IMG/VR virus record: IMGVR_UViG_3300023174_005338
Location: 273,120-337,119 of that record
Reading direction: 5' to 3' (one strand)
DNA length: 64,000 bases
Below, piece by piece: positions 4,798-64,000 of this stretch; positions within the stretch are counted from its first letter, which is position 1; the number at the start of each line of letters is the position of its first letter. The position numbers and the translations under genes were made by a program. The notes beneath the pieces were generated by a model. The model saw only the letters and a list, made by a program, of their open reading frames with translations, did not search any database and was not told where the DNA came from.

Positions 4798-6561
4798 ATG
4801 ATTCAAATAAAAAATCTCACAGTAAAAAACTTTATGAGCGTGGGCAACGCCACGCAAGGCATCGACTTTGATCGACGCGACTTGACACTTGTGTTGGGCG
4901 AGAACTTGGATCTTGGTGGCGACGGAAGCCGCAACGGCACAGGTAAAACTACTATAATCAATGCTCTTAGCTACAGCTTGTATGGGCAAGCATTAAGTAA
5001 CATCCGCAAGGACAACTTAGTCAACAAAACCAACAACAAAAACATGTTGGTCAGTTTGGATTTCAGTGTGGACGGCAAAGATTACCGGATTGAACGAGGC
5101 CGTAAACCCAACCTGCTGAGATTCTTTGTAAACAATCAAGAGCAAGTGGTCACAGACGAAGCACAAGGCGACAGCCGAGAAACACAGGATGCCATTGAAC
5201 ATACCTTGGGCCTCAGTCACGACATGTTCAAACACATTCTGGCACTCAACACTTACACAGAACCGTTTCTGAGTCTCAAAGCCACAGATCAAAGAACCAT
5301 CATTGAACAACTCCTGGGCATAACCATGCTGAGCGAGCGTGCCGATCGAATCAAAGAACACAACAGATCCACCAAAGAAGCCATACAGCAAGAAGAATTC
5401 CGTATTCGAGCTGTTCAAGAAGCCAATAAAAGGATAGAAGAACAGATTGAGGCTTTACGACGTAGACAGACATTATGGGTGACTAAACATGAAGAAGAGA
5501 TTACCAAACTCGAAACCGCGCTCGAAGAACTCAAAAAGATTGACATTGAAGCCGAGATTGCGGCCCACAAGGCGCACAAAGTATGGGATCAGAAGCGCAA
5601 GGACCTTAACGACCTGGCTGGACAGATCTCCCGCACGAAGCTTGATAAGGACCGCGAGAACAAAAGCATTGAGAAGCTTGGCAAGGAGATTGCGACACTT
5701 GAAGATCACACATGTCACACTTGCGGGCAGGCTTTCCACGACCATAAGCACCAACAGGTCCTGGCGGGTAAGCAGGCTGATCTGGCAAGAGCGCGAGAAG
5801 CGTGCCAAGAACATACACAGCTCCTTTCAGAACTCGAGACTGCCCACACAGCCTTGGGCACGTTAGGGCGACCACCTGCTATGTTCTATGATAGTGAAGA
5901 GGATGCCATACAACATCGTAGCAGCATGGCTGCCTTGCAAACTCAATTGACAAACAAACAGGCCGAAACAGATCCCTACGGCGAGCAGATAGCGGACATG
6001 CAAGGTCAGGCTTTGCAGGTAGTAAGCTATGACACACTCAATGAGCTGACCAGACTTCAGGAACATCAAGACTTCTTGCTCAAACTTTTGACCAGCAAGG
6101 ATTCATTCATACGCAAAAAAATCATTGAACAGAATTTGAGTTATTTGAATGCCAGACTCACACACTACCTGGATAGGATTGGCCTGCCGCATACCGTGGT
6201 GTTCCAGAACGATTTGACTGTGAGCATCGAGGAGCTGGGTCGTGAGCTGGACTTTGACAATTTGAGTCGTGGCGAACGCAACAGATTGATCTTGAGCATG
6301 AGCTGGGCCTTTCGTGATGTGTTTGAAAGCCTATACCAGCCCATCAATGTGCTGTTCATAGACGAAATGATTGATTCGGGCCTGGACACACAGGGTGTAG
6401 AAAATGCTCTTGCGTTGCTGAAGCACATGAGCCGCGAACGGCACAAGAGTATTTGGTTGGTCAGCCACAGAGATGAGCTAGCCGGAAGAGTTGAAAACAT
6501 ACTCCGAGTGGTCAAAGAAGGCGGCTTTACCAGTTACAACACGGATGTAGAAATTGCGTAG
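4798..6561 (+). CDS. gp46: Recombination endonuclease ATPase subunit (T4 gp46/SbcC/Rad50-like)
   Basis: Walker A NGTGKTT, coiled coil with CHTC zinc hook, signature LSRGE, Walker B LFIDE and H-loop VSH. Confidence 0.93.
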   Translation: MIQIKNLTVKNFMSVGNATQGIDFDRRDLTLVLGENLDLGGDGSRNGTGKTTIINALSYSLYGQALSNIRKDNLVNKTNNKNMLVSLDFSVDGKDYRIERGRKPNLLRFFVNNQEQVVTDEAQGDSRETQDAIEHTLGLSHDMFKHILALNTYTEPFLSLKATDQRTIIEQLLGITMLSERADRIKEHNRSTKEAIQQEEFRIRAVQEANKRIEEQIEALRRRQTLWVTKHEEEITKLETALEELKKIDIEAEIAAHKAHKVWDQKRKDLNDLAGQISRTKLDKDRENKSIEKLGKEIATLEDHTCHTCGQAFHDHKHQQVLAGKQADLARAREACQEHTQLLSELETAHTALGTLGRPPAMFYDSEEDAIQHRSSMAALQTQLTNKQAETDPYGEQIADMQGQALQVVSYDTLNELTRLQEHQDFLLKLLTSKDSFIRKKIIEQNLSYLNARLTHYLDRIGLPHTVVFQNDLTVSIEELGRELDFDNLSRGERNRLILSMSWAFRDVFESLYQPINVLFIDEMIDSGLDTQGVENALALLKHMSRERHKSIWLVSHRDELAGRVENILRVVKEGGFTSYNTDVEIA

Positions 6562-7420
6562 AATACGAGTCTTACACATTGAACCCACCGACGTTTGTCA
6601 GGCTGCATGCCCGTTGTGTGCCCGAGAGACTGACCCAAACTTTAATAAAAGTTTAAAGCATCATCTCAGAGTAGAGCACATACAAAAACATTTTTCAGAA
6701 CAAGTAATTTCCAAACTGGATAAAATGTTCATGTGTGGCAATTATGGTGATCCGGCTGCAGGCTACTATACCATGGACATCTACAACCACTTTAGAAAAG
6801 TCAATCCAGAAATTGTGTTGGGTATGAACACCAATGGTGCTGTGCAAAGCACGTTCTTTTGGCATGCGTTGGGACGATTGTTCAATCAGCCCAAAGATTA
6901 TTGTGTGTTTAGCATAGACGGATTAGAGGATACCAATCACGTTTATCGTAAAAATGTCAATTGGGCCAAGCTAATGAGCAACGTTCAAGCCTACATTGCC
7001 GCAGGTGGAAGTGCCCATTGGGACATGCTGGTGTACAAACACAATCAACATCAAGTGGATGCTTGCCAGCAACTGGCTCGTGACATGGGATTCAAGTGGT
7101 TCCGTGCCAAGGTCAGCAAGCGTGGATTCACTGATCATTTAGAATTTCCCATCGGGTGGCAACCGCCTGCGGTCAAGGCGGGGCCCATCAAATGCCATGT
7201 GATTAATGAAAAAAGCATGTACATTGATGCGCAAGGTCGTGCCAGTGCCTGTTGCTGGCTTGGTGCCACGCAACAAGATTTTGTCAAAGATGATTTGGCA
7301 ACTGTAAAATTAACTTGGAAAACAGACACACCCAATCCGGTGTGTGTCAGTGCTTGTTCCACAAACAAAAATAAAACCGTATTCCAAGACCAATGGCAAC
7401 GCGAGGTACAACTGTGTTAG
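6554..7420 (+). CDS. Radical SAM protein with C-terminal SPASM/twitch-like Cys cluster
   Basis: CQAACPLC motif, GNYGDP, TNG, FSIDG; C-terminal YIDAQG...CC. Confidence 0.85.
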   Translation: MRRIRVLHIEPTDVCQAACPLCARETDPNFNKSLKHHLRVEHIQKHFSEQVISKLDKMFMCGNYGDPAAGYYTMDIYNHFRKVNPEIVLGMNTNGAVQSTFFWHALGRLFNQPKDYCVFSIDGLEDTNHVYRKNVNWAKLMSNVQAYIAAGGSAHWDMLVYKHNQHQVDACQQLARDMGFKWFRAKVSKRGFTDHLEFPIGWQPPAVKAGPIKCHVINEKSMYIDAQGRASACCWLGATQQDFVKDDLATVKLTWKTDTPNPVCVSACSTNKNKTVFQDQWQREVQLC

Positions 7421-8424
7421 CCACCTGGCATTTTCATATCGAAATCAGTTCAAAGTGTACCCTGCGTTGCCCACGCTGTGCCAGACAAGAGGTTCCCGAC
7501 AGTTTAGTAAACACTGAACTGGATTTAGAATTTTTTAAAAGAAACTTTACCGCAGAGTTTGTTCTTGACAATGTAGAAAAGATCACATTTTGTGGTGACG
7601 ACGGTGATCCTATCTATGCTCACGACCTTATACCAGTGATTCAATACATCAAGTCAATCAAACCTGTTGAGATTGTAGTTGTCACAAATGGATCACACAA
7701 GAAACCAGAATGGTGGCGTGAACTTGGTGGCGTGCTTAGTGAGCAAGATACTGTACACTTTAGCATCGACGGTTGGGACTACCCAAGCAACAATCTGTAT
7801 CGTGTCAACAGTGATTTCAACAGTATTGTCGACGGAATCACTGCACTACGATCAACCTCTGAGTGCCACCTTGTGTGGGCTGCCATTGTCTTTGGGTTCA
7901 ATGAACACCAACTGGGCGCTATGAAAAATCATGCACGTTTGCTAGATATGGATGTATTTCAACTTACCAAGAGCACCAAGTTTGGCTCCGTTTATCTCTC
8001 CTACGGTCCAATCGATGAGCTAGAGCCCAGCCGGCCGTTTGTCAGCAGTTCACACAGATTTGAGAGAGATGTTACACCGATAAGCTCGCGTGGACTCAAT
8101 TCACAGACAAACACCAAGAACATACAATTATACAAATCTGCTGTAGAGATCAACGGTGTAAAACCCCTGTGTGAAATTGGCAACAAAGGACTTTATATTG
8201 ACGCCCAAGGTAGATTATTCCCTTGCTGTTGGGTAGCAAACCGCTACAGTCACAATTCAGAATGGAAAGCTATTGCTAACAAATTTGATTTGAATCGTCG
8301 CACACTGGCCGACGCTGTAACTGACGATTTTTGGTCAACAACATTTAAAACCTTTGGGTGGCAAGAGTGCCAGACTAAGTGTGTAGCGAGCAGGGTAAAT
8401 GAAAAATATGCAACTGAGTGGTAA
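7414..8424 (+). CDS. Radical SAM protein with SPASM/twitch-like domain (paralog of the upstream gene)
   Basis: CTLRCPRC, GDDGDP, TNGS, FSIDG and YIDAQGRLFPCC. Likely GTG start at 7414 with a GAGG SD. Confidence 0.85.
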   Translation: MLATWHFHIEISSKCTLRCPRCARQEVPDSLVNTELDLEFFKRNFTAEFVLDNVEKITFCGDDGDPIYAHDLIPVIQYIKSIKPVEIVVVTNGSHKKPEWWRELGGVLSEQDTVHFSIDGWDYPSNNLYRVNSDFNSIVDGITALRSTSECHLVWAAIVFGFNEHQLGAMKNHARLLDMDVFQLTKSTKFGSVYLSYGPIDELEPSRPFVSSSHRFERDVTPISSRGLNSQTNTKNIQLYKSAVEINGVKPLCEIGNKGLYIDAQGRLFPCCWVANRYSHNSEWKAIANKFDLNRRTLADAVTDDFWSTTFKTFGWQECQTKCVASRVNEKYATEW

Positions 8425-8442
8425 AATGATAAATTATAGTCC

Positions 8443-8871
8443 ATGGTATGGCTGTACGAAAACACTCCGATTGAACAACTACCCGAAGACTGTGTTGGTT
8501 TTGTTTATTTGATCACAAATAACGTTACCGGCAGAAAGTACATTGGAAAAAAATTAGCAAAGTTTAGCAAGACCTCATATCGAGTAGTAAAATTAAAGAA
8601 CGGCTACAAGAAACGTAAAAAGATAAGAAGCAAAATAGATTCAGACTGGCAACTATACTATGGCAGCAACGATCAACTCAACCGAGACATTGCAGAGCTG
8701 GGCTCAGACAACTTCACAAGAGAAATATTGTTTTATTGCCGATCAAAAGCAGAATGCAGTTATGTTGAAGCACGCGAACAATTCAATCATAAAGTATTGG
8801 AATCAGATGACTACTACAATGGACAGATTGTTTGCCGTATACACGGAAGTCATATAAAAAACAAAATTTAA
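8443..8871 (+). CDS. Short stand-alone GIY-YIG nuclease
   Basis: GFVYLITN...KYIGKK, Y(Y)GS, REIL...E and YYN motifs. No C-terminal NUMOD DNA-binding tail. Confidence 0.8.
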   Translation: MVWLYENTPIEQLPEDCVGFVYLITNNVTGRKYIGKKLAKFSKTSYRVVKLKNGYKKRKKIRSKIDSDWQLYYGSNDQLNRDIAELGSDNFTREILFYCRSKAECSYVEAREQFNHKVLESDDYYNGQIVCRIHGSHIKNKI

Positions 8872-8879
8872 ACTTAGAT

Positions 8880-9216
8880 AGGCAACAACATGACTCTGCG
8901 GTAGGACTACCTACCCCCATTGAGGAACGGTGAGATACCCGGTCCAGATTCTTGGGTGTCAAAGGCAATTGCTAACTTAAGGCAACAAATGGTTTGAGCT
9001 CTGTGAAAAAGACACAACTCATGCTCATAGGACTTGGTTCTTCTCGGGTCACTAGGGTTCCGTTGATATGTGAAGCTTGAGTAGGGGGTACCGGTCAACC
9101 GCCTCCGCGTCGCGAGACAATCTCATTAGAAACGAAGTGACTGCTCCGACTCGGATAATGCGGCCTTTTTCACCCGGCAACGGGTGAATTGTGACCACAT
9201 GATCTGGATAATACGG
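8880..9216 (+). ncRNA. Candidate large structured non-coding RNA (class not identified)
   Basis: ORF-free, GC-richer gap. GNRA-capped hairpins at 9169-9188 (GCAA) and 9109-9118 (GCGA), hairpin at 8900-8915, long-range pairing 8942-8950/9201-9209 and a duplicated GTGAC..GGATAATRCGG unit. Confidence 0.55.
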
Positions 9217-9227
9217 AAAAAGAAATC

Positions 9228-9268
9228 ATTGATGAGCGACAGCGAATCAATAGATCTCTAAGAGATCT
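9228..9268. terminator. Hairpins between convergent transcription units
   Basis: ATTGAT...ATCAAT stem and AGATCTC-TAA-GAGATCT inverted repeat at the 3' end of the minus-strand operon. Confidence 0.4.
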
Positions 9269-9603
9269 CAGAACTGATCAGGAAAGTCTCGGAAAAGTGC
9301 GTGCTGAATGTTGCCACTCACAAACTGATTAAAACTTTTGTGTTTGGTTTCTAGTTCACCTTCAAGTGGTGCGACTCTTCGGAATGCCGCGTCCATTTGA
9401 CCCATGTCCTTGAATTCCATTAGTATCATGAATTCAGGCATGTCTGCAATACTACGAAAACCCATCTTGCATCTAGTGATTCTATATGATTCCATTTTTC
9501 CTTCTGAGATCAAATGATCAAAGAAACTTTTCATTCCGTTGACCCAGTCCAGGTCTGAGATATTGCCTTCTTTGTCTGCCCAAATTGTATATAAGTCTGC
9601 CAT
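9268..9603 (-). CDS. DUF6614-like protein
   Basis: DLY.IW.D, HL..EG..ESYRITR.K.GF, PEF.I.MEF.D..Q.D.AF and terminal H pattern. Confidence 0.55.
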   Translation of the reverse strand: MADLYTIWADKEGNISDLDWVNGMKSFFDHLISEGKMESYRITRCKMGFRSIADMPEFMILMEFKDMGQMDAAFRRVAPLEGELETKHKSFNQFVSGNIQHALFRDFPDQF

Positions 9604-21790: not shown

Positions 21791-21887
21791 TAAATACTTG
21801 TCAACGCAATCCTGCGTTTTATGCGGCTCTAACCCAGCCGCGTAGTCGCTAGAACCGACATTGGGCTTCTTTAAGGAGAAAACAAAA
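21791..21887 (+). promoter_or_regulatory. Late promoter plus three-hairpin structured 5' leader
   Basis: TAAATA at 21791; stems 21803-21818, 21820-21844 and 21845-21859; AAGGAG SD. Confidence 0.55.
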
Positions 21888-22679
21888 ATGGGACGTCCTC
21901 TCAAAATTAAAAAAATTATCGAAACTGGTTATAATTCTACTACCGGTGCAAACCCTGGTGTTGACATCGGTTTCAATGCACTAACTAGTTTGACAGCACC
22001 TGTGTACCCTAGTCCTGTATGGGATTCGGCCACAGAATATCTAGGCGTGGTTGGCGGAGCTCAGCCTCCTACCGTGGCCAGCACCAACTATCCTATCGTC
22101 AAGTGCCGTGTGTTTGTCACAGGTTTTGCCGAAGCAGATGGTCAAATTATTCGTCAAAAAGGCGCACACAAGTTCTTGGTAGCAGATACAACCAGCAGAA
22201 CAGCACTGGTGGCCAATCAGGCCTATCGCATTACTACAGTAGGCAACACAGACTGGGCCAGCTATGGTGCTCCCAACGCACAGATTGGCACAATCTTCAC
22301 AGCCACAGCGGCCTTGGGCAATACAGGCACAGGTCGTGTCAACGCGGTTGGCATCTGTGTGTTGGCCAACGATTTGAGCCCCACAGCCGGCAACATGAGC
22401 ATCAGCTACTTTGATAATTCATCCACCGAAGTTGCAATCAGCAAGCTAACCAACAAGTTCTTGCAGAATTTCAACGGCGGCGAAGCTGGTGGCAATGCCG
22501 ATACTGGCAACGTTTGGGATTACACACAAGTGGTCAACAACGTTACCTATGCTGCCAACTTCTTCAGCGACGAAGGGGTCACAGCCAAATCGGGTGCAGA
22601 AGTTGACACCTGGGCAGGCACCAGCCAGCTCAGCAGCGGCAACTTGGATCTTGCTATTGTAGAAAACTACAATACTTAA
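21888..22679 (+). CDS. Putative virion structural protein
   Basis: Strong SD, start MGRPLKI, IIRQKG..KFLV motif; first gene of the fibre cluster. Confidence 0.55.
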   Translation: MGRPLKIKKIIETGYNSTTGANPGVDIGFNALTSLTAPVYPSPVWDSATEYLGVVGGAQPPTVASTNYPIVKCRVFVTGFAEADGQIIRQKGAHKFLVADTTSRTALVANQAYRITTVGNTDWASYGAPNAQIGTIFTATAALGNTGTGRVNAVGICVLANDLSPTAGNMSISYFDNSSTEVAISKLTNKFLQNFNGGEAGGNADTGNVWDYTQVVNNVTYAANFFSDEGVTAKSGAEVDTWAGTSQLSSGNLDLAIVENYNT

Positions 22680-25722: not shown

Positions 25723-25972
25723 AAATATCCCTGCTACGTCACGGATTTTTTGCTGAGAAATAAATACAGTATCCTTCCAACAGACCACTGCTGTCTACCC
25801 AGCAACACCGTCTCTCCAGAGCGAATAGCTCCAAAAAATCGTGTTGCAATATCCAAAATATCCGGACTCTGGTAAATACATCATAGCCCGTGAATTTTCA
25901 CGAGCTTAAAATTTAAGGTTGATGACATTGAGTCATCAACAGTGTTGTAAAAAGGCAATCGGAGATAAAAAA

Positions 25973-28900
25973 ATGCCAGTCACACGAATTAATAACAATC
26001 AAGTCACAGACGCTTCAGCAGGCAATACCATTGTTGGTATCAACGCAGGCACCAAACTGCAAAATTACTCGATCACTGCTACCAAGATCGCCAACAACTT
26101 GACCTATGGTTCGGATTTGACTATCACAGGTAATTTGACCGTCCAAGGCAATACCACAGCCATTGACACCACGACAACTACCATTGAAGATCCGTTGTTG
26201 TTGTTGGCCTCAACACAAACAGGAGCCCCATCAGTAGACATTGGTTATATTGGCGAGCGCGGCACCAGCGAAAATATTGCATTTGTATGGGACGAAAGTG
26301 CCAGCGAATTTGTTACGGCTTTTACCAGCACAACTGATTCCAACACAACCATAACTATCACCAGCTATGCCAATGCTCGCGTGGGCAACATGGTAGTAGG
26401 TGGCACTACCAGTTTATCTGGCAACGTGATTGGCACAGCAAACTTCACAGGCAACGTTAATGCAGGCAACGTGAGTGCAGTTGGCACTATGAGAGCTGCT
26501 TCAACTGTGGGCGGTGTGATAACCGGTTCGAGTGCAAGTGTCACAGGTGGAGTCACTGCCGCATCGGTTGCAGGTGGAGTCATTACAGGTACAAGTACAA
26601 GTGTCACTGGCACACAAACAGCTGCGAGTACAGTGGGTGGAGTCATAACTGGCACAAGCGCAAGTGTCACAGGTGGAGTCACTGCCGCATCAGTGGCAGG
26701 TGGCGTTATCACCGGAACTTCTACTTCAGTAACAGGAACACAAACCGCCGCCTCAACAGTGGGTGGCGTCATAACCGGTTCGAGTGCAAGTGTCACAGGT
26801 GGAGTCACTGCCGCATCGGTTGCAGGTGGCGTTATCACCGGAACTTCTACTTCTGTAACTGGCACACAAACTGCTGCTTCGACAGTGGGTGGTGTAATCA
26901 CCGGAACTTCTACTTCTGTAACTGGCACACAAACCGCCGCCTCAACAGTGGGTGGTGTTATTACTGGTTCCAATGTCAGTGTCTCTGGCAACGTTGTTGC
27001 TGCAGGGAACGTAAGTGCCGCTTGGTTGATTGGTAACATACAAGGTTCAGTGACATCACCTGGTGCCAACACACAGATCTTGTTCAACGACAGCGGAGTG
27101 GCCAATGCCACTGGCGGATTCACATTCAACAAAACATCAAACTTGGTCACTGTAGGTGGCAACGTCAACGCAACCAATTTCAATGGCAATGTGTTTGGCA
27201 CAAGTGTCAGTGCAAGTGGTACGGTAACAGCTGCCTCAACTGTGGGTGGAGTTATCACAGGTACATCAACTTCTGTAACTGGCACACAAACTGCTGCTAG
27301 TACAGTGGGCGGTGTGATTACAGGTTCAAGTTCAAGTGTCACAGGAACACAAACAGCTGCCTCAACAGTGGGTGGCGTAATCACCGGAAGTTCTACTTCC
27401 GTAACTGGTAGTCAAACAGCTGCCTCCACAGTGGGCGGCGTAATCACTGGATCAAGTGTCAGTGTCACAGGCACAGCCACTGCGGCCTCAACTGCGGGCG
27501 GTGTGATCACTGGATCAACCATCAGTACCACAGGCAACATCACAGGTCCCAATGTCAATGCAGCACAACTTTACAATGCCACTGCGGTCACGGTCAAAGC
27601 CGGCACAGGCAACATTAATCTTGATACCACTTCAGGCAACATCGTGGTCAACAATACCTACATCAACGGTGTACAATTAAACCCAGTACAGAACTCGGAC
27701 GTGGCATCTAAGTATTATGTTGACCTCCAGGCTTCAACAGCATTGACCTTCCACTCAGCAGTGCAAGCGGCCACCACAACGACCCTGGCCACAACCACGG
27801 GTGGTACTATAACCTACGCACAACCCAATGGTGTTGCCAATGGCGTTGGTGCTACGTTAACTACAACTGGCTCGTTCAACCTCATCGACACAGCCAACGT
27901 TCAAACCGTGGGCACAAGAATCTTGGTCAAGAACGAAGGCAATGGTGTATTCAACGGCGTTTACACCTGGAGCAATGCCACAGTGATCACACGTGCCACA
28001 GATGCTGACGTTTACGGACCCAACGATGCAGAAGAGCTCAGCCTCAACGACTATTTCTTTGTGGCTGGCGGCAACGTCAACGTGGGATCTGCCTGGGTGG
28101 TTGATGCTCCACAAGGAGTCATCACATTTGGCACTAGCAACATCCAATTTGCCCAGTTCAGCCAAGCCCAGATTTATTCAGCCAATACCTCAGCTGGTTT
28201 GAGCCTAATAGGCACAGTGTTCTCAGCCAAGGTCGACAACAATACCACGGCCTTTGACGGACAAGGCAATATTTCAGTCAAAGCTGGCGCAAACCTGACC
28301 ACACCCAACATTGGTGCTGCCACAGGTACAAGTTTAAGCGTCACTGGCACAGTCACAGCCGCATCAACCGTGGGTGGAGTCATAACTGGCACAAGCGCAA
28401 GTGTCACAGGTGGCGTCACAGCCGCATCGGTGGCAGGTGGTGTGATAACAGGTACAAGTACAAGTGTCACTGGCACACAAACAGCTGCGAGTACAGTGGG
28501 TGGAGTCATAACTGGCACAAGCGCAAGTGTCACAGGTGGAGTCACTGCCGCATCAGTGGCAGGTGGCGTTATAACAGGTACATCAACAAGTGTCACTGGC
28601 TCACAAACAGCAGCCTCAACAGTGGGTGGTGTGATTACGGGTACAAGCGTCAGCGTTTCTGGCAACGTAACAGCTGGCAACACCAACAGCAACTTGTATG
28701 GAACCACAGTCAGTGCCAGTGGCACTGTGACTGCTGCTAGTACTGTGGGTGGAGTAATCACAGGAACTTCTACGTCTGTAACCGGCACACAAACTGCCGC
28801 GAGTACAGTGGGTGGTGTAATTACTGGATCAAGTGTGTCAGTCACAGGTGGTGTAACAGCCGCTTCAGTGGCAGGTGGAGTGATCACTGGCACAAGTACC

Positions 28901-31276
28901 AGCGTAACTGGCACACAAACAGCGGCATCTACAGTGGGTGGTGTCATAACAGGAACATCTGCTTCATTGAGTGGTAACGTCACTGGTGGCAACATCCTAA
29001 CCAGCGGCAACGTAAGTGCCACAGGCAATGTCACAGGTGCTTGGTTGATTGGTAACATACAAGGATCGGTCACATCTCCTGGTGCCAATACCCAGATTTT
29101 GTTCAACGACAGCGGTGTAGCCAATGCCACAGCAGGATTCACGTTTAACAAGACCTCAAACTTGGTCACTGTGGGTGGCAATGTCAATGCCACCAATTTC
29201 AATGGCAATGTGTTTGGCACCTCAGTCAGTGCTAGTGGCACAGTTACAGCCGCGTCTACGGTGGGCGGAGTCATAACCGGATCAAGTGCTAGTGTAACAG
29301 GTACTGTGACTGCTGCATCAACAGTGGGTGGTGTGATTACCGGATCAACAGCCAGCCTTAGTGGCAATATAACTGGAGCCAATCTCATACTGTCATCGGG
29401 CTTTGTAGATGGTCCAGCCGCAGGCAGGATCACCATCAATGGAAGAGACTTTGATACAGACTTTGCTGTGGATGGCAATACTGCAGCCAACGTGTTCTAT
29501 GTGGATGCCGGCACAGGCACAGCCAGCTTTGGCAACAGCACACAGGTCACCAATGCATTGGTATCTTTCCAGAGCACAAACTCAATCCGGACGCCAGTAG
29601 GCAACACAGCACAGCGTCCAAGTGTGGGTGTCACAGGTATGTTGCGTTTCAATACCACTACCAACGCTGTGGAAGTCTATGACAACAGTCAATGGACCTC
29701 GGTGGGTGTTCCAGTGTTCACAGTGATAGCTGACCAACAGTTTGCGGGTGATGGCAGCACAGTAGCATTTACACTGGGCAGCACACAGACAACCAACAGT
29801 TGTATTGTTTCGATCAACGGTGTGGTACAGATTCCAACCCTGGCCTATGCAGTAGCAGGCACCAATCCAACCTGCGTGCTCACATTCACAGAAGCTCCGG
29901 CTGCTGGTGACGTGATTGATGTGCGCCAGATCACCACAACAACCACAGTTACTCAGATCAGCAATAGCAGCGGCAATGCTGCGGTCTCAACCAGTCCTAG
30001 CTCTGCACAGGTCAATGTCACTGGAGACCTCAGTGTCAGTGGAAGTATCTTGGGTGGTAATATCAACAGCACTGCTATCACCAATGGCACATCAAACATG
30101 TCAGTGGTCAGCAGTGGTGGCAACATACGTGGCAACGTGGGCGGCACCACAGTCATGACCATAAGCCCAGGTCTAGTAGACATTGTGGGCGACTTGACTG
30201 TGTCGGGCAATGCCACACTCAGCGGCAACATCCTGGGCGATCGTGTACAGAATGGTACAACCAGCATTGACATCCAAACACCCAATGGCAATGCCAACAT
30301 CAGTATTGCTGGCACAAGCAACGTGGCTGTGTTTACCACCACTGGTGTAAGTGTCGCTGGCAACGTTTCGGCTGGCAATGTTCTAATCAGTGGCAATATT
30401 GTTGACACAAATGCGTTAAGCATTATTACAGGTAGCAACGGTAACATTGCTTTGGCACCCAATGGCTCAGGCATAGTCACAGTGAGTTCTGCTTTGAGTG
30501 CCACCGGCAACATCACAGGTGGCAATCTTAGATTGGGATCGGGCAGCAATGCGGTATTGGATTTTGCCAGCGCCAATCTGCACATAACAAACAACAATGC
30601 CAGTGGCAATATCACTTTGTTTACCAATTTTGGTGGCAGTGGTGTTGTTGAGGTCTTCAAAGTACTTGGCACAGGCACACAGGGGGTGTTTACCAATGGA
30701 GATATTACACTCAGTGGCAACATCAGTGACACTGGTGCACTTAACATTAACACAGGCAGCAACGGTAACCTGACTCTTAATGCTGGCAGTGGTAGTATTA
30801 TAATCAACAGTGGCATCCTCAACGGTCAAGCCAATGCCACAGGCAATATTGGTAGCGCCACCAGTTATTTCAACACCATATTTGCCAAAGCCACTTCAGC
30901 ACAGTACGCTGACTTGGCCGAGAAATACACCGCAGACGCAGAATATGCACCGGGTACAGTGGTACAGTTTGGTGGCTCAGCTGAAGTTACCTTGTGTGTC
31001 GACGATGGCTGTGCAAGAGTGGCAGGTGTAGTTTCTACCAACCCCAGCTACAGAATGAACGATGGCTTGCAAAGTGCGCATACTGCCATGGTAGCACTCA
31101 CTGGTCGTGTGCCTACAAGCGTAACTGGCACAGTGCGCAAAGGTGACATGATGGTGTCAGCTGGCAACGGCACAGCAAGAGCTGAAGCCAATCCACAGGT
31201 AGGAACAGTGATTGGCAAAGCCCTGGCTGACAGCGAAGGCGATGCAGTTATAGAAGTAGTAGTCGGCCGCGTTTAA
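25973..31276 (+). CDS. Giant repeat-rich tail fibre-like protein with C-terminal intramolecular chaperone (peptidase G2/IMC-like)
   Basis: ATG 25973 with GGAG SD; 21-aa Thr/Ser/Gly repeats; RILVKN....NGVY module; C-terminal ATSAQYADLAEKY...VALTGRVP...IGKAL. Confidence 0.75.
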   Translation: MPVTRINNNQVTDASAGNTIVGINAGTKLQNYSITATKIANNLTYGSDLTITGNLTVQGNTTAIDTTTTTIEDPLLLLASTQTGAPSVDIGYIGERGTSENIAFVWDESASEFVTAFTSTTDSNTTITITSYANARVGNMVVGGTTSLSGNVIGTANFTGNVNAGNVSAVGTMRAASTVGGVITGSSASVTGGVTAASVAGGVITGTSTSVTGTQTAASTVGGVITGTSASVTGGVTAASVAGGVITGTSTSVTGTQTAASTVGGVITGSSASVTGGVTAASVAGGVITGTSTSVTGTQTAASTVGGVITGTSTSVTGTQTAASTVGGVITGSNVSVSGNVVAAGNVSAAWLIGNIQGSVTSPGANTQILFNDSGVANATGGFTFNKTSNLVTVGGNVNATNFNGNVFGTSVSASGTVTAASTVGGVITGTSTSVTGTQTAASTVGGVITGSSSSVTGTQTAASTVGGVITGSSTSVTGSQTAASTVGGVITGSSVSVTGTATAASTAGGVITGSTISTTGNITGPNVNAAQLYNATAVTVKAGTGNINLDTTSGNIVVNNTYINGVQLNPVQNSDVASKYYVDLQASTALTFHSAVQAATTTTLATTTGGTITYAQPNGVANGVGATLTTTGSFNLIDTANVQTVGTRILVKNEGNGVFNGVYTWSNATVITRATDADVYGPNDAEELSLNDYFFVAGGNVNVGSAWVVDAPQGVITFGTSNIQFAQFSQAQIYSANTSAGLSLIGTVFSAKVDNNTTAFDGQGNISVKAGANLTTPNIGAATGTSLSVTGTVTAASTVGGVITGTSASVTGGVTAASVAGGVITGTSTSVTGTQTAASTVGGVITGTSASVTGGVTAASVAGGVITGTSTSVTGSQTAASTVGGVITGTSVSVSGNVTAGNTNSNLYGTTVSASGTVTAASTVGGVITGTSTSVTGTQTAASTVGGVITGSSVSVTGGVTAASVAGGVITGTSTSVTGTQTAASTVGGVITGTSASLSGNVTGGNILTSGNVSATGNVTGAWLIGNIQGSVTSPGANTQILFNDSGVANATAGFTFNKTSNLVTVGGNVNATNFNGNVFGTSVSASGTVTAASTVGGVITGSSASVTGTVTAASTVGGVITGSTASLSGNITGANLILSSGFVDGPAAGRITINGRDFDTDFAVDGNTAANVFYVDAGTGTASFGNSTQVTNALVSFQSTNSIRTPVGNTAQRPSVGVTGMLRFNTTTNAVEVYDNSQWTSVGVPVFTVIADQQFAGDGSTVAFTLGSTQTTNSCIVSINGVVQIPTLAYAVAGTNPTCVLTFTEAPAAGDVIDVRQITTTTTVTQISNSSGNAAVSTSPSSAQVNVTGDLSVSGSILGGNINSTAITNGTSNMSVVSSGGNIRGNVGGTTVMTISPGLVDIVGDLTVSGNATLSGNILGDRVQNGTTSIDIQTPNGNANISIAGTSNVAVFTTTGVSVAGNVSAGNVLISGNIVDTNALSIITGSNGNIALAPNGSGIVTVSSALSATGNITGGNLRLGSGSNAVLDFASANLHITNNNASGNITLFTNFGGSGVVEVFKVLGTGTQGVFTNGDITLSGNISDTGALNINTGSNGNLTLNAGSGSIIINSGILNGQANATGNIGSATSYFNTIFAKATSAQYADLAEKYTADAEYAPGTVVQFGGSAEVTLCVDDGCARVAGVVSTNPSYRMNDGLQSAHTAMVALTGRVPTSVTGTVRKGDMMVSAGNGTARAEANPQVGTVIGKALADSEGDAVIEVVVGRV
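26490..29370 (+). repeat. Coding 63-nt (21-aa) tandem repeats in three blocks, plus an internal duplication
   Basis: Units TAASTVGGVITGTSTSVTGTQ / TAASVAGGVITG.SASVTGGV. The segment WLIGNIQGSVTSPGANTQILFNDSG...NVFGTSVSASGTV occurs twice (~27020 and ~29040). Confidence 0.9.
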
Positions 31277-31292
31277 TAGCTTAAAGCTGTGA

Positions 31293-31324
31293 AAAATAGG
31301 ACTGGTCACAGTCCTATTTTTTTT
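31293..31324 (+). terminator. Rho-independent terminator
   Basis: AAAATAGGACTG-GTCA-CAGTCCTATTTT plus a T run. Confidence 0.8.
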
Positions 31325-31354
31325 GGCTAAATATTAAACATTAATGGAACTACA

Positions 31355-33673
31355 ATGGGATTAACCAAACCGCGTGCCGCGCAGATATTTAATTTAGATT
31401 ACAAACAAAGTACGCGAGTCGTTACCGCCACCAACATCACCTTGAGTGGCGGTGCCCCTAACAGTGTAGATGGCATAAATCTCAGCTTGAATGACCGTGT
31501 GCTGGTAACAGGTCAAACAGCAGGCAGCCAAAACGGACTTTACCTGGTGACCACACTGGGTTCTGGTAGTAACGGAACCTGGGCTAGAACCAGCGACGGC
31601 AACGAAAACGGCGAAATTGAAGCTGGCATGATTGTCATGGTCACCGAAGGCATCATCTATGCCGACACACAGTGGAAACTGATCACCGACGATCCTATAG
31701 TGATTGGCACCACGGCCCTGACGTTTACGCAAAACTACATGGCCAACTCAATATCGAGCGGTACATCAAACGTGGTGGTTGGTAGTAATGCCAATGTGAC
31801 CATCAGTTCAGCAGGCACCGCCAATGTGTTGACTGTAAGTTCAACAGGTACAGTTACATCGGGCACAGGATCAGTTACCGGAAATATCACAGGTGGTAAT
31901 ATCCTAACTGGTGGCCAGGTAAGTGCCACAGGTAACATCACTGCCAACTACTTTTTGGGCAACGTGGCCTGTGCTTCGGGCATATTTTCATCCAGAATAT
32001 TCAACGGTACTAGTGAAGCCAACATTGGAGCATCGGGTGGCAATGCCAACATCAGCATAGGTGGCACATCAAACGTGGCAGTATTTGCCACCACAGGTCA
32101 ATTCGTAACTGGACTGATTAGTGCCACAGGCAACATTACAGGTGGTAACGTTTTGAGCGGAGCCAACATCAATGCTACTACTTACACAGGAACTACAGTT
32201 TCAGCCACAGCCAACATCACTGGCGGCAACGTATTAACCGGGGGGATCGCAAGTGCCACAGGCAACATCACAGGCGGCAATATTCGCACAGCCGGCACGG
32301 TTTCGGCCACAGGCTGTGTTTATGGTATTGAACTTTATTCAACTCAAAGCAGCGGAGATGAAGGTGGCCAGTTAAATCTAGCATTGGCCGCCACAAATAC
32401 AACGTTGTCAACTTCGGTGGCCATAGATATTTTTCAAAACCGAGTAAGGATTTTTGAAACTGGCGGAACCAACCGTGGTGGATATTTTGATCTGTCAACC
32501 TGTAATGCTGGTGTTGGCACTAACTTTGCAGCTGGTGGTGGCGGGGGCGGAACTCCTGGAGGAGCCAACACACAAGTTCAATATAATAATTTAGGGGCTT
32601 TTGGCGCCAGTGCAGCCTTTACCTTCAACAATGTATCTAATGCTGTGGTTGTTACTGGCAATATCACCGGCGGTAACTTATTGACTGCTGGTTTAATTAG
32701 TGCCACTGGCAATATCACCGGCGGCAACATCTTGGGCGGAGCCAATGTCAATGCAACCACGCATACAGGAACCAGTGTAAGTGTAAGTGGTGGTGTAACC
32801 GCTGCTAGTGTGGCTGGTGGTGTGATCACAGGAACATCAACATCGGTAAGTGGAGGAGTTACAGCCGCATCAGTAAGTGGTGGTGTGATCACAGGCTCAA
32901 GTGTCAGCGTGTCTGGAACTGTGACAGGTGCAAGTTTGGCTGGAACCATAACTACTGCCAGCCAAACAAATATCACCGCTGTTGGCACATTGGGCAGTTT
33001 GAGTGTGACAGCCAACACAACTGTTGGTAACTTATTGACCGGAGGTTTGATTTCGGCCACAGGCAACATCAGCGGGGGTAATTTTAATATTACAGGTAAC
33101 ATTGTTGACACAGGTGCATTGGCCATCATCACCAGCTCCAACGGTAACATTACCTTGTCACCCAATGGCACCGGCGTAATCGTAGTCAACACCGATATTA
33201 GAAATGGTCAAGCCAATGCCACAGGTAACATTGGTAGTGCTACAAACTACTTCAATACTGTGTTTGCCAAAGCCACTAGTGCTCAATATGCCGACTTGGC
33301 AGAAATGTATGCCAGTGACCAGCCGTATTCTCCTGGCACCGTAGTAGAATTTGGAGGATCTGCAGAAATCACACAATCTACCCAAAGTCATAACACACGT
33401 GTGACTGGTATAGTATCCACCAATCCTAGTTACTTGATGAATGCCACACTCACGGGCGATCATGTGTTGCCAGTGGCCTTGGTGGGACGAGTCCCTTGTC
33501 AGGTTGTTGGAACCATTGTCAAAGGCGATCGCCTGGTGGCCAGCGACAAGCCCGGTGTTGCCACAGCCCTGGATGGGGCCAAGTATCAGCCGGCTTGCAT
33601 TATTGGTAAGGCCTTGGAAAACTATGATTCTACAGAAGTTGGAACCATAGAAGTGGCCGTGGGCAGGACCTGA
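31355..33673 (+). CDS. Tail fibre-like protein, paralog of the upstream fibre, same C-terminal chaperone domain
   Basis: DRVLV.GQT..SQNG.Y module, GNITGGN repeats, and AKATSAQYADLAEMY...VALVGRVP C-terminus. Confidence 0.75.
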   Translation: MGLTKPRAAQIFNLDYKQSTRVVTATNITLSGGAPNSVDGINLSLNDRVLVTGQTAGSQNGLYLVTTLGSGSNGTWARTSDGNENGEIEAGMIVMVTEGIIYADTQWKLITDDPIVIGTTALTFTQNYMANSISSGTSNVVVGSNANVTISSAGTANVLTVSSTGTVTSGTGSVTGNITGGNILTGGQVSATGNITANYFLGNVACASGIFSSRIFNGTSEANIGASGGNANISIGGTSNVAVFATTGQFVTGLISATGNITGGNVLSGANINATTYTGTTVSATANITGGNVLTGGIASATGNITGGNIRTAGTVSATGCVYGIELYSTQSSGDEGGQLNLALAATNTTLSTSVAIDIFQNRVRIFETGGTNRGGYFDLSTCNAGVGTNFAAGGGGGGTPGGANTQVQYNNLGAFGASAAFTFNNVSNAVVVTGNITGGNLLTAGLISATGNITGGNILGGANVNATTHTGTSVSVSGGVTAASVAGGVITGTSTSVSGGVTAASVSGGVITGSSVSVSGTVTGASLAGTITTASQTNITAVGTLGSLSVTANTTVGNLLTGGLISATGNISGGNFNITGNIVDTGALAIITSSNGNITLSPNGTGVIVVNTDIRNGQANATGNIGSATNYFNTVFAKATSAQYADLAEMYASDQPYSPGTVVEFGGSAEITQSTQSHNTRVTGIVSTNPSYLMNATLTGDHVLPVALVGRVPCQVVGTIVKGDRLVASDKPGVATALDGAKYQPACIIGKALENYDSTEVGTIEVAVGRT

Positions 33674-34335
33674 TGCAAGCCCGATATCGCACAGACTACG
33701 CTGGCGAATTTGTCATACTAGAAACACGCTGGACCGGTGGCCGTAAAACTGAAAACAGAGAGTGGATTGCTAATCCCATTGAAAATCATCATATCTCGGG
33801 CCGGGCTGCTTGTATTGGCAGCGATCTAGATATCTGGCAGTTTGATCATTGTCGACTGCAACGACATCGTGGTGGTTTGCTGGGTTCAAAAAAATTGCAG
33901 ACCTATGGCACCGGTGCTATAGCTCAACAGATGCGCTTGGATTTTACTGTGGCTACCAGTCAGTCTGATCTGGACCTGATCATGGCACAGCAATATCAAA
34001 CTCAAAATATCGTTTACACCAGCCCTCGTCATTGCATCCTAAATCCGGGCGAATTTTATTTAATTCCCTACAGGCCTAGGATTACCGACATGGCCACCAT
34101 CATATATCTGGCCGCATTCGATGGTCACAAAGAAATATTTTTATTGGGCTACAATGACGAACTGCCAGGCGGCCACAACGAATGGGTACAGCAGATCTCC
34201 AAGATATTTGAAGCCTACAGTGGTGTTAAATTTTATTTGATAGGTCAAAAAACACGCATGCCAGATGTCTGGTTGAATTGTGCCAATGTGCAAAACATGA
34301 CTTATCGCGACTTCATTGGCTACTGCGATTGTTGA
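33673..34335 (+). CDS. Second, divergent DUF115/MptE-like protein
   Basis: A.CIGS, QTYG and IYLAAFDGHKEIFLLGY motifs resemble 22732..23319. Confidence 0.45.
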   Translation: MQARYRTDYAGEFVILETRWTGGRKTENREWIANPIENHHISGRAACIGSDLDIWQFDHCRLQRHRGGLLGSKKLQTYGTGAIAQQMRLDFTVATSQSDLDLIMAQQYQTQNIVYTSPRHCILNPGEFYLIPYRPRITDMATIIYLAAFDGHKEIFLLGYNDELPGGHNEWVQQISKIFEAYSGVKFYLIGQKTRMPDVWLNCANVQNMTYRDFIGYCDC

Positions 34336-56700: not shown

Positions 56701-57429
56701 TTCATAGGCGACGGTGGATTCATCAGCAACATCACTACAGCAGTTCCGACCAAGATCGTCAATGGTACCAGCTGGGCCAACATAGCCGCATCAGGTGGTA
56801 ATCTGGTCATTGCCATAGCCGGCAACACCGTGCAGACTATCAGTGCAGGTGGAGCCAACATCACTGGTTATGCCAATGTTTCAGGCAACATCACAGGTGG
56901 TAACCTGGCCGTGAGTGGTATTAGTAACTTGAATAGCAATGCAAATGTCAAGATCACTGGCGGTAGCACAGGACAACTGTTGAGCACAGATGGTGCTGGA
57001 AATTTGTTCTGGATCAGTTCGGGCAATATCGCCCCAACATCGGGCACTTGGACACCCACTCTAGTTCCAGAAACTGGCTCTTACACATTAACCATCAACA
57101 ACACTTTTTATCAAAAGATTGGCGGCGTGGCCTTCTGCACATTTGACATCACCATTGCCAGTGTATCCACACCAAACGGCAATGTGATCATGGGTAACTT
57201 GCCGTTTACATCCGCAAGCACCGCGGCCACCACTGGATCACTGGCAGTGTCATTTTACACAGGCATGAACTCACCTACCAACGTTGTCTCGGGCACTGTT
57301 CCTGGATCAGCCAACACCGTGACCATGTATTGGCAAGGTTCTTCTGATACCAAAATGGATCCATTGACGCATAACAGGCTCAAGGCAACCACTCGATTGG
57401 TTGGATCAGTTTATTACGCAACAGTATAA
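53773..57429 (+). CDS. Tail fibre/receptor-binding-like protein
   Basis: Gly/Asn/Thr-rich beta repeats; C-terminal GTWTPTL...YQKIG..V...GNLPF domain. Confidence 0.7.
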   Translation: MSFIQNLFTSRDNNANGASYVGQQDRIWWNPDTNAFYYSNGNTPGGIPIGAGGAGSPGGPVSSIQYNLGGGTFGGTANLVIDGAGLSAVGNITAAWFIGNVSTTGNITGGNILTNNYLYANGQSIFANIQLTGNIDLGNLYITDQTIYGKNLNANIGLSPEGDGWVVVPKIDISGMTVANTGTAVQFDTDAGIDLQFGPGTGGNILTAGTIKPTSNNLAGLGAVGSRYTDLWLGSGNINIIDQTLNQNQQIYANQGNLIIGNASGLTFGNFRFYGNVMALGNAAANIQIGTANATGYVNFNRSIAVIPSGNVGAAKVFEVARDGRTKIYASDPIPLSDAAFQVIGSSSGNSQPRNFTGTMMQVTGQDDATNRITFDAFGVAGSTNAYNVLASRVARGTVDSPQPIQSNDILFRLSSQGWTGNNAYASGVARLSFGAAEAFASNAAVGTYANIQLVPVGSNVIKTVTGFSGSGINFPNAISGGTGNLGITFQDGTFQNTAYLPSGVVSSLTAGAGISLSGPTGDITVTNTGILGVIGTPNRVTVASNVGGVVTLTTPQDLNTTANMTLYSLTVTNLSVTGNVSNVIPSIIDGPVVFVANTATVYNDINTSGLITGNIANSTSAGILYKTATNTWNFDYGNSWGITANTVYGNSSFINNFAHVGYANATVEYGNATIQADSSVDNFSQIVQQNHFQGANASSDFVAVANNGDESNFYIDLGINSNVYNNADYAVTKANDGYLYVNGGNLVIGTQTASRVINLFTGGTSNTQNFIRGTVSDTGLSMVGNVTANNLTGNTLFSTDGISAAGNIAGTNLSVTGIVTGSSITGSVVSATGTVTGGNLRTSGTISATGNIITAANLVTATTVINSGVSTSGTVTAANINGANITASGTISAIGNISTPNLNASIAIVSTLLSITGNIDGGNLRTSGIISTTGNATFGNVQTTGRVSVTGNIDGGNIRTAGIITATGNISTAGFFIGDGGFISNITTAVPTKIVNGTSWANIAASGGNLVIAIAGNTVQTISAGGANITGYANVSGNITGGNLAVSGISNLNSNANVKITGGSTGQLLSTDGAGNLFWISSGNIAPTSGTWTPTLVPETGSYTLTINNTFYQKIGGVAFCTFDITIASVSTPNGNVIMGNLPFTSASTAATTGSLAVSFYTGMNSPTNVVSGTVPGSANTVTMYWQGSSDTKMDPLTHNRLKATTRLVGSVYYATV

Positions 57430-63748: not shown

Positions 63749-63773
63749 ATTTGTAATCTGAACAACCGCGTCA

Positions 63774-63834
63774 TAAATACTCTTGACGCTACTCAAACCA
63801 GCGTGTATACTTGCTAAAGTGTATGCGCTTTTTT
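63774..63834 (+). promoter_or_regulatory. Late promoter, sigma70 promoter and overlapping terminator hairpin upstream of gp32
   Basis: TAAATA at 63774; TTGACG (63783)-17 nt-TATACT (63806); imperfect stem 63801-63828 followed by a T run. Confidence 0.65.
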
Positions 63835-63911
63835 GTCAGCATCACAGGCAACGTAACATCTAAACATTTAGATAGGCAACACATAGTAAACTTTAGAAAG
63901 GCAACTCAACT

Positions 63912-64000
63912 ATGGCATCATTAGCAGAAATTCGCGCAAGACTAGCCGCCAGCGAATCCAAACAAGGCGGAAACTCCACAGGCGGTGACAACTCGATTTA
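63912..64000 (+). CDS. Probable single-stranded DNA-binding protein (gp32-like), N-terminus only
   Basis: MASLAEIRARLAA...GGDNSI, a typical N-terminus for this protein in such phages. Truncated by the window end. Confidence 0.6.
   Translation, partial: MASLAEIRARLAASESKQGGNSTGGDNSI

What the first reader, a model, noticed from the sequence alone, without database searches (positions are those of the whole stretch)
8866..8986. TTAGATAGGCAACA motif shared between the ncRNA 5' end and the gp32 leader
Seen: the 14-mer TTAGATAGGCAACA occurs at 8874-8887 and again at 63868-63881, 55 kb away. Both follow AT(T/C)TAAAC, which forms a tiny hairpin with TTAGAT. A looser copy (TAACTTAAGGCAAC) lies at 8973-8986. 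Established: T4 gp32 autoregulates translation through its leader. Inference: a common protein-binding or processing signal links this RNA to ssDNA-binding protein regulation or replication.
Basis: partly seen in the sequence, partly recalled or inferred. Interest (0 to 1): 0.6.

Follow-up and report, generated by a model that had tools for sequence, protein, structure and literature searches.

The report
Shared leader motif of phage replication genes
A short sequence (core AGGCAAC, often preceded by a small hairpin) is conserved in many related freshwater jumbo phages, repeated just before the start codons of the single-strand-binding protein, a DNA polymerase subunit and a small unknown protein, and it also sits just before a structured non-coding RNA; it is most likely a shared RNA-level control signal, but no experiment yet shows what binds it.

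Summary
The exact 14-mer occurs at window 8874-8887 and 63868-63881. A repeated 14-mer alone is not significant, since about 15 arise by chance in a window this size. Context and conservation make it significant.

The core AGGCA(AC) occurs 2-4 times, sense strand only, in 67 of 68 distinct gp32-like SSB leaders of related phages. It occurs in tandem (13-nt period) before a conserved 109-aa gene, and in 54 of 64 DnaE-like polymerase leaders. It lies 4-6 nt upstream of a conserved, covarying ncRNA in 24 of 35 relatives, including relatives where a different gene precedes the RNA. A weight matrix built only from relatives' leaders scores window 8873-8887 as the best site in the 337-kb genome.

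TTAGAT is the 3' arm of a covarying AU-rich hairpin.

Best reading: a translational-operator-like RNA element of a small replication regulon, analogous to the UUAAA repeats of the T4 gene 32 operator and also carried by the ncRNA. The binding factor is unknown. A ribosome-docking element, a processing site and a DNA-level site are not excluded. No RNA-seq could be obtained.

The parts
8866..8879 (+). Weak AU-rich hairpin (ATTTAA / TTAGAT with one U.G pair). Its 5' arm overlaps the stop codon (8869-8871) of the SegE-like GIY-YIG ORF.
   Evidence: Sequence. It aligns with the covarying hairpin of the gp32 leaders, where it is the single U.G case. Relatives with a 3-nt loop can form 6 bp.
8880..8886 (+). 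AGGCAAC core, 5 nt upstream of the conserved 5' box GACTCTG (8892-8898) of the ncRNA.
   Evidence: 24 of 35 distinct related flanks carry AGGCA[AG]C 4-6 nt before the box. This includes loci where another gene precedes the RNA. It is the top genome-wide hit of a weight matrix built from relatives' leaders.
8892..9267 (+). Conserved structured ncRNA. The 3' end is uncertain; there are hairpins at 9171-9190 and 9253-9267. It is a single copy in the genome.
   Evidence: 72-92% DNA identity in relatives, often higher than the flanking ORF. 82 predicted pairs, 31 with compensatory changes; invariant G.U pairs place it on the + strand. nhmmer finds one copy. No Rfam hit for the window itself. In 8 of 15 relatives the orthologous spot is RF01718 Polynucleobacter-1.
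8961..8968 (+). Invariant, predicted unpaired AAAGGCAA inside the ncRNA. It is a motif-like internal copy.
   Evidence: Identical in all 23 aligned ncRNAs and unpaired in the consensus structure. PWM score 12.9.
8969..8985 (+). Small helix of the ncRNA (8969-8973 with 8981-8985).
   Evidence: Compensatory changes at three pairs (columns 128-132/140-144).
63783..63811 (+). Sigma-70-type promoter of the SSB gene (TTGACG, 17 nt, TATACT). A late-type ATAAATA lies just upstream at 63773-63779.
   Evidence: Sequence. Equivalent promoters are present in relatives. TAAATA is the most enriched hexamer upstream of genes in this genome after the SD.
63819..63845 (+). 5' hairpin of the early SSB transcript (GTGTATGC / GCATCAC). 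Read from upstream transcripts, 63800-63835 instead forms an 11-bp terminator-like hairpin followed by a U-run.
   Evidence: Sequence. The arms change together in relatives. By inspection only; not formally tested.
63846..63852 (+). AGGCAAC copy 1 of the SSB leader.
63858..63873 (+). AU-rich hairpin ATCTAA(acat)TTAGAT.
   Evidence: 98% of cells paired in 38 sequences. Two pairs show compensatory changes. Loops are 3-6 nt. Slid controls give 12-45% paired.
63874..63880 (+). AGGCAAC copy 2, abutting the hairpin. The 14-mer of the finding is 63868-63881.
63899..63905 (+). AGGCAAC copy 3, 6 nt before the SSB start codon (63912-63914). Its AAAGG serves as the only Shine-Dalgarno-like sequence.

Best explanation
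AGGCAAC (extended consensus about CTTAGA[A/T]AGGCAAC) is an RNA-level cis-element of a small regulon of replication-related genes in this family of freshwater jumbo phages.

It is repeated in the 5' untranslated leaders of three genes: the gp32-like SSB, a DnaE-like polymerase subunit and a conserved 109-aa protein. One copy always lies at or next to the ribosome-binding site. One or more further copies lie 10-28 nt upstream. In the SSB leader the copies flank a small AU-rich hairpin.

Inferred mechanism: a trans-acting RNA-binding factor recognises the repeats and occludes the ribosome-binding site. The factor may be the SSB itself, by analogy with T4 gp32, or an unidentified phage protein. 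This would tie synthesis of replisome proteins to the amount of free factor.

The same element sits 5 nt upstream of a Polynucleobacter-1-like structured ncRNA, and that RNA holds an invariant AAAGGCAA. This suggests the RNA binds the same factor, as a partner or as a competitor.

Shown: the motif, its strand bias, its positions, its conservation and the hairpin. Inferred: action at RNA level, protein binding and repression.
For: - Copy number of AGGCA per 110-nt leader, sense versus antisense: SSB 2.65 vs 0.03 (67 of 68 distinct leaders have at least 2); p109 1.79 vs 0 (44 of 57 have at least 2); DnaE-like 1.2 vs 0.14 (54 of 64 have at least 1).
- All copies lie between a recognisable promoter and the ATG and in the gene's orientation, including the minus-strand DnaE-like gene.
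- The last copy ends 3-8 nt before the ATG in p109, in most DnaE-like leaders and in 29 of 68 SSB leaders. In the other SSB leaders a separate AAGGAG follows it.
- Copies that are not in SD position still keep CAAC (85%) and often read TAGG, which gives only 3 nt of anti-SD pairing. The genome's usual SD is AAGGAG.
- The hairpin covaries and has variable loop length, and the window's ncRNA-flank copy uses a U.G pair. This favours RNA over a DNA operator.
- The weight matrix from relatives ranks the ncRNA flank, the p109 leader and the SSB leader copies as the top four distinct sites in 337 kb.
- The motif stays with the ncRNA when the upstream gene differs.
- Precedent: the T4 gene 32 operator is a folded 5' element plus repeated UUAAA/UAAA reaching the RBS (PMC535899). 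The Atu_ph07 SSB leader has a hairpin plus four tandem CACAATT(T)AG-type repeats. Lineage-specific repeats in SSB leaders therefore recur.
Against: - There are no expression, 5'-end or binding data.
- No candidate regulator was identified. No RegA (PF01818; its control did not ring), CsrA or cold-shock domain was found in the genome.
- p109 has no family, and its model (pLDDT 70) has no fold match.
- 11 of 35 ncRNA flanks lack the motif, so it is dispensable for the RNA.
- In many leaders the last copy sits exactly where an SD would, so part of the conservation may be ordinary ribosome binding.
- Hairpin covariation rests on only two variable pairs.
Confidence: 0.42

Rival explanations
1. Ribosome-docking or stabiliser element. 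The copies are SD-like (A)AGG sites with a CA-rich spacer. They recruit 30S subunits as standby sites for high expression, or shield the 5' part of the RNA from decay, as STAB-SD elements do (from my own knowledge of B. subtilis mRNA stabilisers). The copy before the ncRNA would stabilise that RNA.
For: The last copy has SD-like spacing: GG lies 5-9 nt from the ATG in p109 and DnaE-like leaders and in about half of the SSB leaders. The unrelated wHTH gene has a look-alike GAAAGGTAAC that is simply its SD. In some SSB and DnaE-like leaders the first copy lies within a few nt of the expected transcript start.
Against: Copies away from the RBS keep CAAC and frequently read TAGGCAAC or CAGGCAAC, with only 3 nt of anti-SD complementarity. 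The genome's real SD is AAGGAG, and it is present in addition in 35 SSB leaders. The ncRNA has no conserved start codon after the motif.
Confidence: 0.22
2. Endoribonuclease processing signal. A host enzyme (RNase E/G-type) or a phage enzyme cuts at or near the motif. This would release the ncRNA from the GIY-YIG transcript and trim or inactivate the replication-gene mRNAs. It would be comparable in logic to RNase E processing of the T4 gene 32 leader and to RegB cleavage at SD sequences (own knowledge; review PMC3014915 listed, not read).
For: There is a fixed 4-6 nt distance from the motif to the first conserved base of the ncRNA. No convincing promoter lies directly upstream of the ncRNA in the window (and inspection), so the RNA probably needs 5' processing. 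AU-rich single-stranded flanks lie next to a hairpin.
Against: The distance from motif to ATG varies from 1 to 22 nt among mRNA leaders. Tandem copies 13 nt apart are not expected for a cleavage site. 11 of 35 ncRNAs lack the motif. There are no 5'-end data.
Confidence: 0.13
3. DNA-level element. The motif is the recognition site of a phage transcription factor, or a promoter element of a phage-redirected RNA polymerase (a middle-type class). It would then act on duplex DNA rather than on RNA.
For: The sequence-specific consensus is long, about 15 nt. The motif lies directly upstream of the ncRNA's conserved start. Tandem direct repeats are typical of some DNA-binding regulators. In three relatives a possible TTGAC(C)-15 nt-TAGAA(T/A) promoter ends about 7 nt before the motif (inspection only).
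Against: All mRNA-leader copies lie downstream of good sigma-70-type or late-type promoters. No T7-type RNAP or sigma-70 region 2 was found in the genome. The motif does not resemble a -10/-35, late TATAAATA or sigma-54 pattern. The associated palindrome has a variable 3-6 nt centre and a U.G case. A 13-nt repeat period does not match the DNA helical repeat.
Confidence: 0.12
4. No function at the ncRNA site. The 8866-8887 copy would be a recombination leftover or a chance resemblance to the SSB leader.
For: Repeated 14-mers are common by chance. The motif is absent from 11 of 35 related ncRNA flanks.
Against: It is retained, with substitutions (AGGCAGC, TTAGAC), at a fixed distance in 24 of 35 flanks and in different gene contexts. 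It is the best PWM match in the genome.
Confidence: 0.05

Closest known systems
Translational operator of bacteriophage T4 gene 32 (autogenous repression by gp32)
   Same: It lies in the leader of the phage SSB gene. It combines a folded 5' element with several copies of a short sequence that run into the ribosome-binding site (PMC535899).
   Different: The fold here is a simple hairpin, not a demonstrated pseudoknot. The repeat is AGGCAAC, not UUAAA/UAAA. The same repeat also precedes a polymerase gene, a 109-aa gene and an ncRNA. Binding by the SSB is untested.
T4 RegA translational repressor regulon
   Same: One short RNA motif overlaps the initiation regions of several early or replication genes.
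   Different: No RegA-family protein was detected (weak test because the control did not ring). RegA sites are AU-rich and single, not GC-containing tandem repeats (own knowledge).
CsrA/RsmA with CsrB/RsmZ-type sponge RNAs
   Same: A short motif is repeated in mRNA leaders, with one copy over the SD. The same motif is present on a structured ncRNA.
   Different: The motif lacks GGA. The ncRNA carries only 1-3 copies. No CsrA was found in the phage. The sponge role is pure inference.
Polynucleobacter-1 RNA (Rfam RF01718), for the adjoining ncRNA
   Same: In 8 of 15 related loci the orthologous position, directly after the SegE-like GIY-YIG gene, scores 91-118 bits for RF01718. The discoverers noted a conserved upstream gene family and a freshwater origin (PMC2864571 supplement).
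   Different: The window's own RNA is not recognised by RF01718. It shares only the roughly 200-nt 3' domain that lies outside the Rfam model. RF01718-type loci lack the upstream AGGCAAC.

Membership tests
T4 gene 32-type translational operator | Located in the 5' leader of the phage SSB gene, between promoter and AUG | tested here: met
   Promoter at 63783-63811, motif copies at 63846-63905, ATG at 63912. The layout is the same in 68 related leaders.
T4 gene 32-type translational operator | 5' RNA pseudoknot as nucleation site | tested here: inconclusive
   Hairpins are present, one with covariation. No pseudoknot was found by inspection, and no pseudoknot-capable prediction was run.
T4 gene 32-type translational operator | Repeated UUAAA/UAAA elements in an unstructured stretch reaching the RBS | tested here: not met
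   The repeated element is AGGCA(AC). UAAAC-type strings occur but are hairpin arms.
T4 gene 32-type translational operator | Bound and repressed by the cognate SSB | not testable with these tools
   Needs EMSA, footprinting or in vitro translation.
RegA-type regulon | RegA-family protein (PF01818) encoded by the phage | tested here: inconclusive
   No match in the genome, but the family rang in none of the control genomes either.
RegA-type regulon | Operator overlapping the initiation region of several genes | tested here: met
   SSB, DnaE-like and p109 leaders.
Csr/Rsm system | GGA core motif, CsrA-family protein and a many-copy sponge RNA | tested here: not met
   AGGCAAC has no GGA. No PF02599 in the genome, with the control ringing. 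The ncRNA has 1-3 copies.
Shine-Dalgarno sequence | At least 4-5 nt complementary to the anti-SD, 5-10 nt before the start codon | tested here: inconclusive
   The start-proximal copy fits (AAAGG, spacing 5-9 nt). Upstream copies and the ncRNA copy do not (TAGG or CAGG, no start codon).
Rfam RF01718 Polynucleobacter-1 (adjoining ncRNA) | Score at or above the family's gathering threshold (37 bits) | tested here: not met
   No hit in window 8700-9400 even at E up to 10. Orthologous loci of 8 relatives score 91-118 bits.
Sigma-70 or T4-late promoter | -35/-10 hexamers or TATAAATA at the right distance from the RNA start | tested here: not met
   The scan reports nothing at 8860-8890. The bases at -12 to -7 relative to 8892 read AGGCAA.

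The most novel reading that the evidence does not exclude
A Csr-like circuit inside a jumbo phage. An as yet unidentified phage RNA-binding protein (the SSB itself or the conserved 109-aa protein) recognises AGGCAAC repeats. Through them it jointly represses translation of the SSB, a DnaE-like polymerase subunit and p109. The Polynucleobacter-1-like ncRNA carries the same element at its 5' edge and an invariant AAAGGCAA inside, and would be its high-affinity partner or sponge. That would give this orphan RNA family its first function.
Probability: 0.15. Interest if true: 0.8.

Novelty: new variant of a known kind. Interest (0 to 1): 0.55.

Why it matters
Autogenous control of the SSB through its leader is a classic of T4 biology, but it is known in detail only for T4 and RB69. 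Here a different, sequence-defined repeat is conserved across many uncultured freshwater jumbo phages. It is shared by the SSB, a polymerase subunit and a third gene, which points to coordinated post-transcriptional control of the replisome.

The motif also links that control to a structured ncRNA. The relatives of this ncRNA belong to an Rfam family (Polynucleobacter-1) that has had no function and no known phage carrier since 2010.

The motif gives simple, testable handles: mutate the repeats, pull down the binder, delete the RNA.

Tried and rejected
No other route was tried, so there are no 5' ends or expression data.
- Rfam: nothing in 8700-9400 beyond noise. The only family hit in the window is freshwater-2 at 21802-21890.
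- Single-sequence folding of 8860-9200 is not significant on either strand (z -1.5 and -0.9). The structure is supported by covariation only.
- DNA-level search of cultured phages with both loci found no match.
- Heptamer enrichment of AGGCAAC on the + strand (26 vs 12 expected) was rejected as evidence. Most copies are Gly-Asn codons in fibre repeats.
- The wHTH 87-aa gene (TTAGAAAGGTAACA) was rejected as a regulon member. Relatives show a single ordinary SD there.
- PWM hit at genome 52869 (minus strand) is coding, Ile-Gly-Asn.
- p109 as candidate regulator: no Pfam or PHROG family, no PDB sequence or fold match, and the Atlas is uninformative.
- No RegA, CsrA, cold-shock domain, T7-type RNAP or sigma-70 region 2 was found in the genome.
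- A pseudoknot between the loop of the first SSB-leader hairpin and the first AGGCAAC was considered and dropped. The connecting loop is too short and the pairing is not conserved.
- Antisense pairing of the ncRNA with the motif: no conserved GUUGCC(U) was seen in the ncRNA on inspection.
- Sigma-54-like reading of tandem GGCA: the spacing is wrong by 2 nt.
- GC skew gives no origin signal at either site.

Full report
**What is there**

The window is the last 64 kb of a 337,119-bp virus record with a 127-bp terminal repeat. The record's break falls inside the leader of a gp32-like SSB gene. That gene starts at window 63912 and continues at the beginning of the record (324 aa; PHROG 1192 E 9e-68; Pfam gp32 only 20.5 bits, below its 26.8-bit cut-off).

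The 14-mer TTAGATAGGCAACA is present exactly at 8874-8887 and 63868-63881 and nowhere else in the genome. A 2-mismatch copy lies at 63893-63906.

**Is it more than chance?**

A repeated 14-mer alone is not. Markov-1 simulations of the window give 15 +/- 5 repeated 14-mers, and the real window has about 30 scattered ones outside the fibre repeats. The + strand excess of AGGCAAC (26 vs 12 expected) is mostly Gly-Asn codons of tail-fibre repeats.

What is unusual is the clustering. Five copies of the core lie in two short non-coding stretches: 8880 and 8980, and 63846, 63874 and 63899. Elsewhere in the genome, tandem copies precede a 109-aa ORF (genome 102708 and 102721, behind a perfect TTGACA-17-TATAAT promoter) and a minus-strand 557-aa DnaE-like gene (genome 95444 and 95430).

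**Conservation**

IMG/VR holds hundreds of relatives.

- SSB leaders. In 68 distinct leaders, AGGCA occurs 2.65 times per 110 nt on the sense strand against 0.03 antisense. 67 of 68 have at least two copies.
- p109 leaders. In 57 leaders the figures are 1.79 against 0. 44 have two copies, mostly exactly 13 nt apart.
- DnaE-like leaders. 54 of 64 have at least one copy, usually two copies 9-12 nt apart behind a late-type ATAAATA.

The start-proximal copy ends 3-8 nt before the ATG in p109, in most DnaE-like leaders and in 29 of 68 SSB leaders. In the remaining SSB leaders a canonical AAGGAG follows the last copy.

A weight matrix was built only from relatives' SSB and p109 leaders. It ranks window 8873-8887 first in the whole genome with the maximum possible score. 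The p109 leader and the two SSB leader copies come next, and everything after them is coding.

The 87-aa wHTH gene looks similar in this genome but has a single ordinary SD in relatives, so it is not a member.

**The hairpin**

In most SSB leaders, TTAGAT is the 3' arm of a 5-7 bp AU-rich hairpin that abuts an AGGCAAC copy. Across 38 sequences 98% of cells pair. Two pairs show compensatory changes (C-G to U-A in nine sequences, A-U to U-A in two). Loops vary from 3 to 6 nt, and slid controls pair 12-45%.

The copy at 8866-8879 is the one case with a U.G pair, and its loop is very small. Its 5' arm overlaps the stop codon of the upstream ORF.

**The RNA next to it**

Window 8892 to about 9267 is a conserved non-coding region. 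DNA identity to relatives is 72-92%, often above that of the flanking SegE-like GIY-YIG ORF. The consensus structure has 82 pairs, 31 of them with compensatory changes. Several invariant G.U pairs put the RNA on the + strand. It is single-copy.

Rfam does not recognise it. However, in 8 of 15 related loci the orthologous position scores 91-118 bits for RF01718, the Polynucleobacter-1 RNA. Those RNAs share the 3' domain with the window's RNA.

The discoverers of that motif reported it downstream of one conserved gene family in freshwater samples and in no purified phage (PMC2864571 supplement). I take that gene family to be the GIY-YIG gene seen here; this is an inference.

**Motif and RNA**

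AGGCA[AG]C lies 4-6 nt before the conserved 5' box GAC[T/A]C[T/A]G in 24 of 35 distinct flanks. This includes loci where a different gene precedes the RNA. The motif therefore belongs to the RNA, not to the GIY-YIG gene. It is also dispensable, because 11 flanks lack it.

An invariant, unpaired AAAGGCAA at 8961-8968 is a better candidate for an internal copy.

**Interpretation**

Four features point to action in the RNA, at or near translation initiation:
- the strict sense-strand orientation;
- the position between promoter and start codon;
- one copy always at the ribosome-binding site;
- the hairpin with variable loop.

The anti-SD alone does not explain the conservation. Copies away from the RBS keep CAAC and often read TAGG or CAGG, while the genome's normal SD is AAGGAG.

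The closest precedent is the T4 gene 32 operator, a folded element plus UUAAA repeats reaching the RBS (PMC535899). Lineage-specific repeats recur in SSB leaders of this supergroup. Atu_ph07 has a hairpin plus four tandem CACAATT(T)AG-type units. PA5oct has a hairpin plus an AU-rich stretch and no AGGCA.

I therefore favour a translational-operator-like element of a small replication regulon, with the ncRNA carrying the same site (confidence about 0.4). The binder is unknown. No RegA, CsrA or cold-shock domain was found, and p109 gave no family or fold match.

Ribosome docking or stabilisation, endonucleolytic processing and a DNA-level site remain open, because no transcript data could be obtained.

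**Verdict**

This is a new sequence variant of a known kind of control element, with an unexpected link to an orphan ncRNA family.

Noticed in passing
window 8443-9267: The SegE-like GIY-YIG ORF is only 142 aa, i.e. the catalytic domain alone (PF19835, E 7e-34). In most relatives a roughly 370-nt structured RNA follows it directly, and in some this is an RF01718 Polynucleobacter-1 RNA starting 9 nt after the stop. A nuclease-plus-RNA functional unit is conceivable.
   Followed up: partly
window 63800-63835: An 11-bp hairpin followed by a U-run looks like an intrinsic terminator for the upstream 574-aa gene. Its 5' arm contains the -10 box (TATACT) of the SSB promoter. Transcripts from that promoter would contain only the 3' arm. 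The arms change together in relatives.
   Followed up: partly
window 21802-21890: freshwater-2 RNA (RF02980, 65.8 bits) lies directly upstream of an ORF and ends in AAGGAG...ATG.
   Followed up: no
L384:530-600 (Agrobacterium phage Atu_ph07 SSB leader): A hairpin is followed by four tandem 9-10-nt repeats (CACAATTTAG type) running into the SD. This is a different repeat in the same place as AGGCAAC here.
   Followed up: no
related loci L094, L097, L122, L141, L157, L166 (first hairpin of RF01718): The loop of the first hairpin of the Polynucleobacter-1-type RNAs reads AGGCCAAC or GGCCAA, one base longer than AGGCAAC. This may be coincidence.
   Followed up: no
window 6554-8424: Two adjacent radical-SAM ORFs (288 and 343 aa) lie upstream of the GIY-YIG gene. 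A DUF6614 gene (9268-9603, minus strand) is convergent with the ncRNA.
   Followed up: no
genome C1:93749-95422 (L168:750-2423, minus strand): The DnaE-like ORF of 557 aa covers only the Pol III alpha NTPase and finger domains, so the polymerase seems to be split or truncated.
   Followed up: no
window 25900-33700 and 53773-57429: Long fibre-like ORFs hold many near-identical repeats rich in Thr-Gly-Asn (ACAGGCAAC). They account for most repeated 14-mers and AGGCAAC counts in the window.
   Followed up: no
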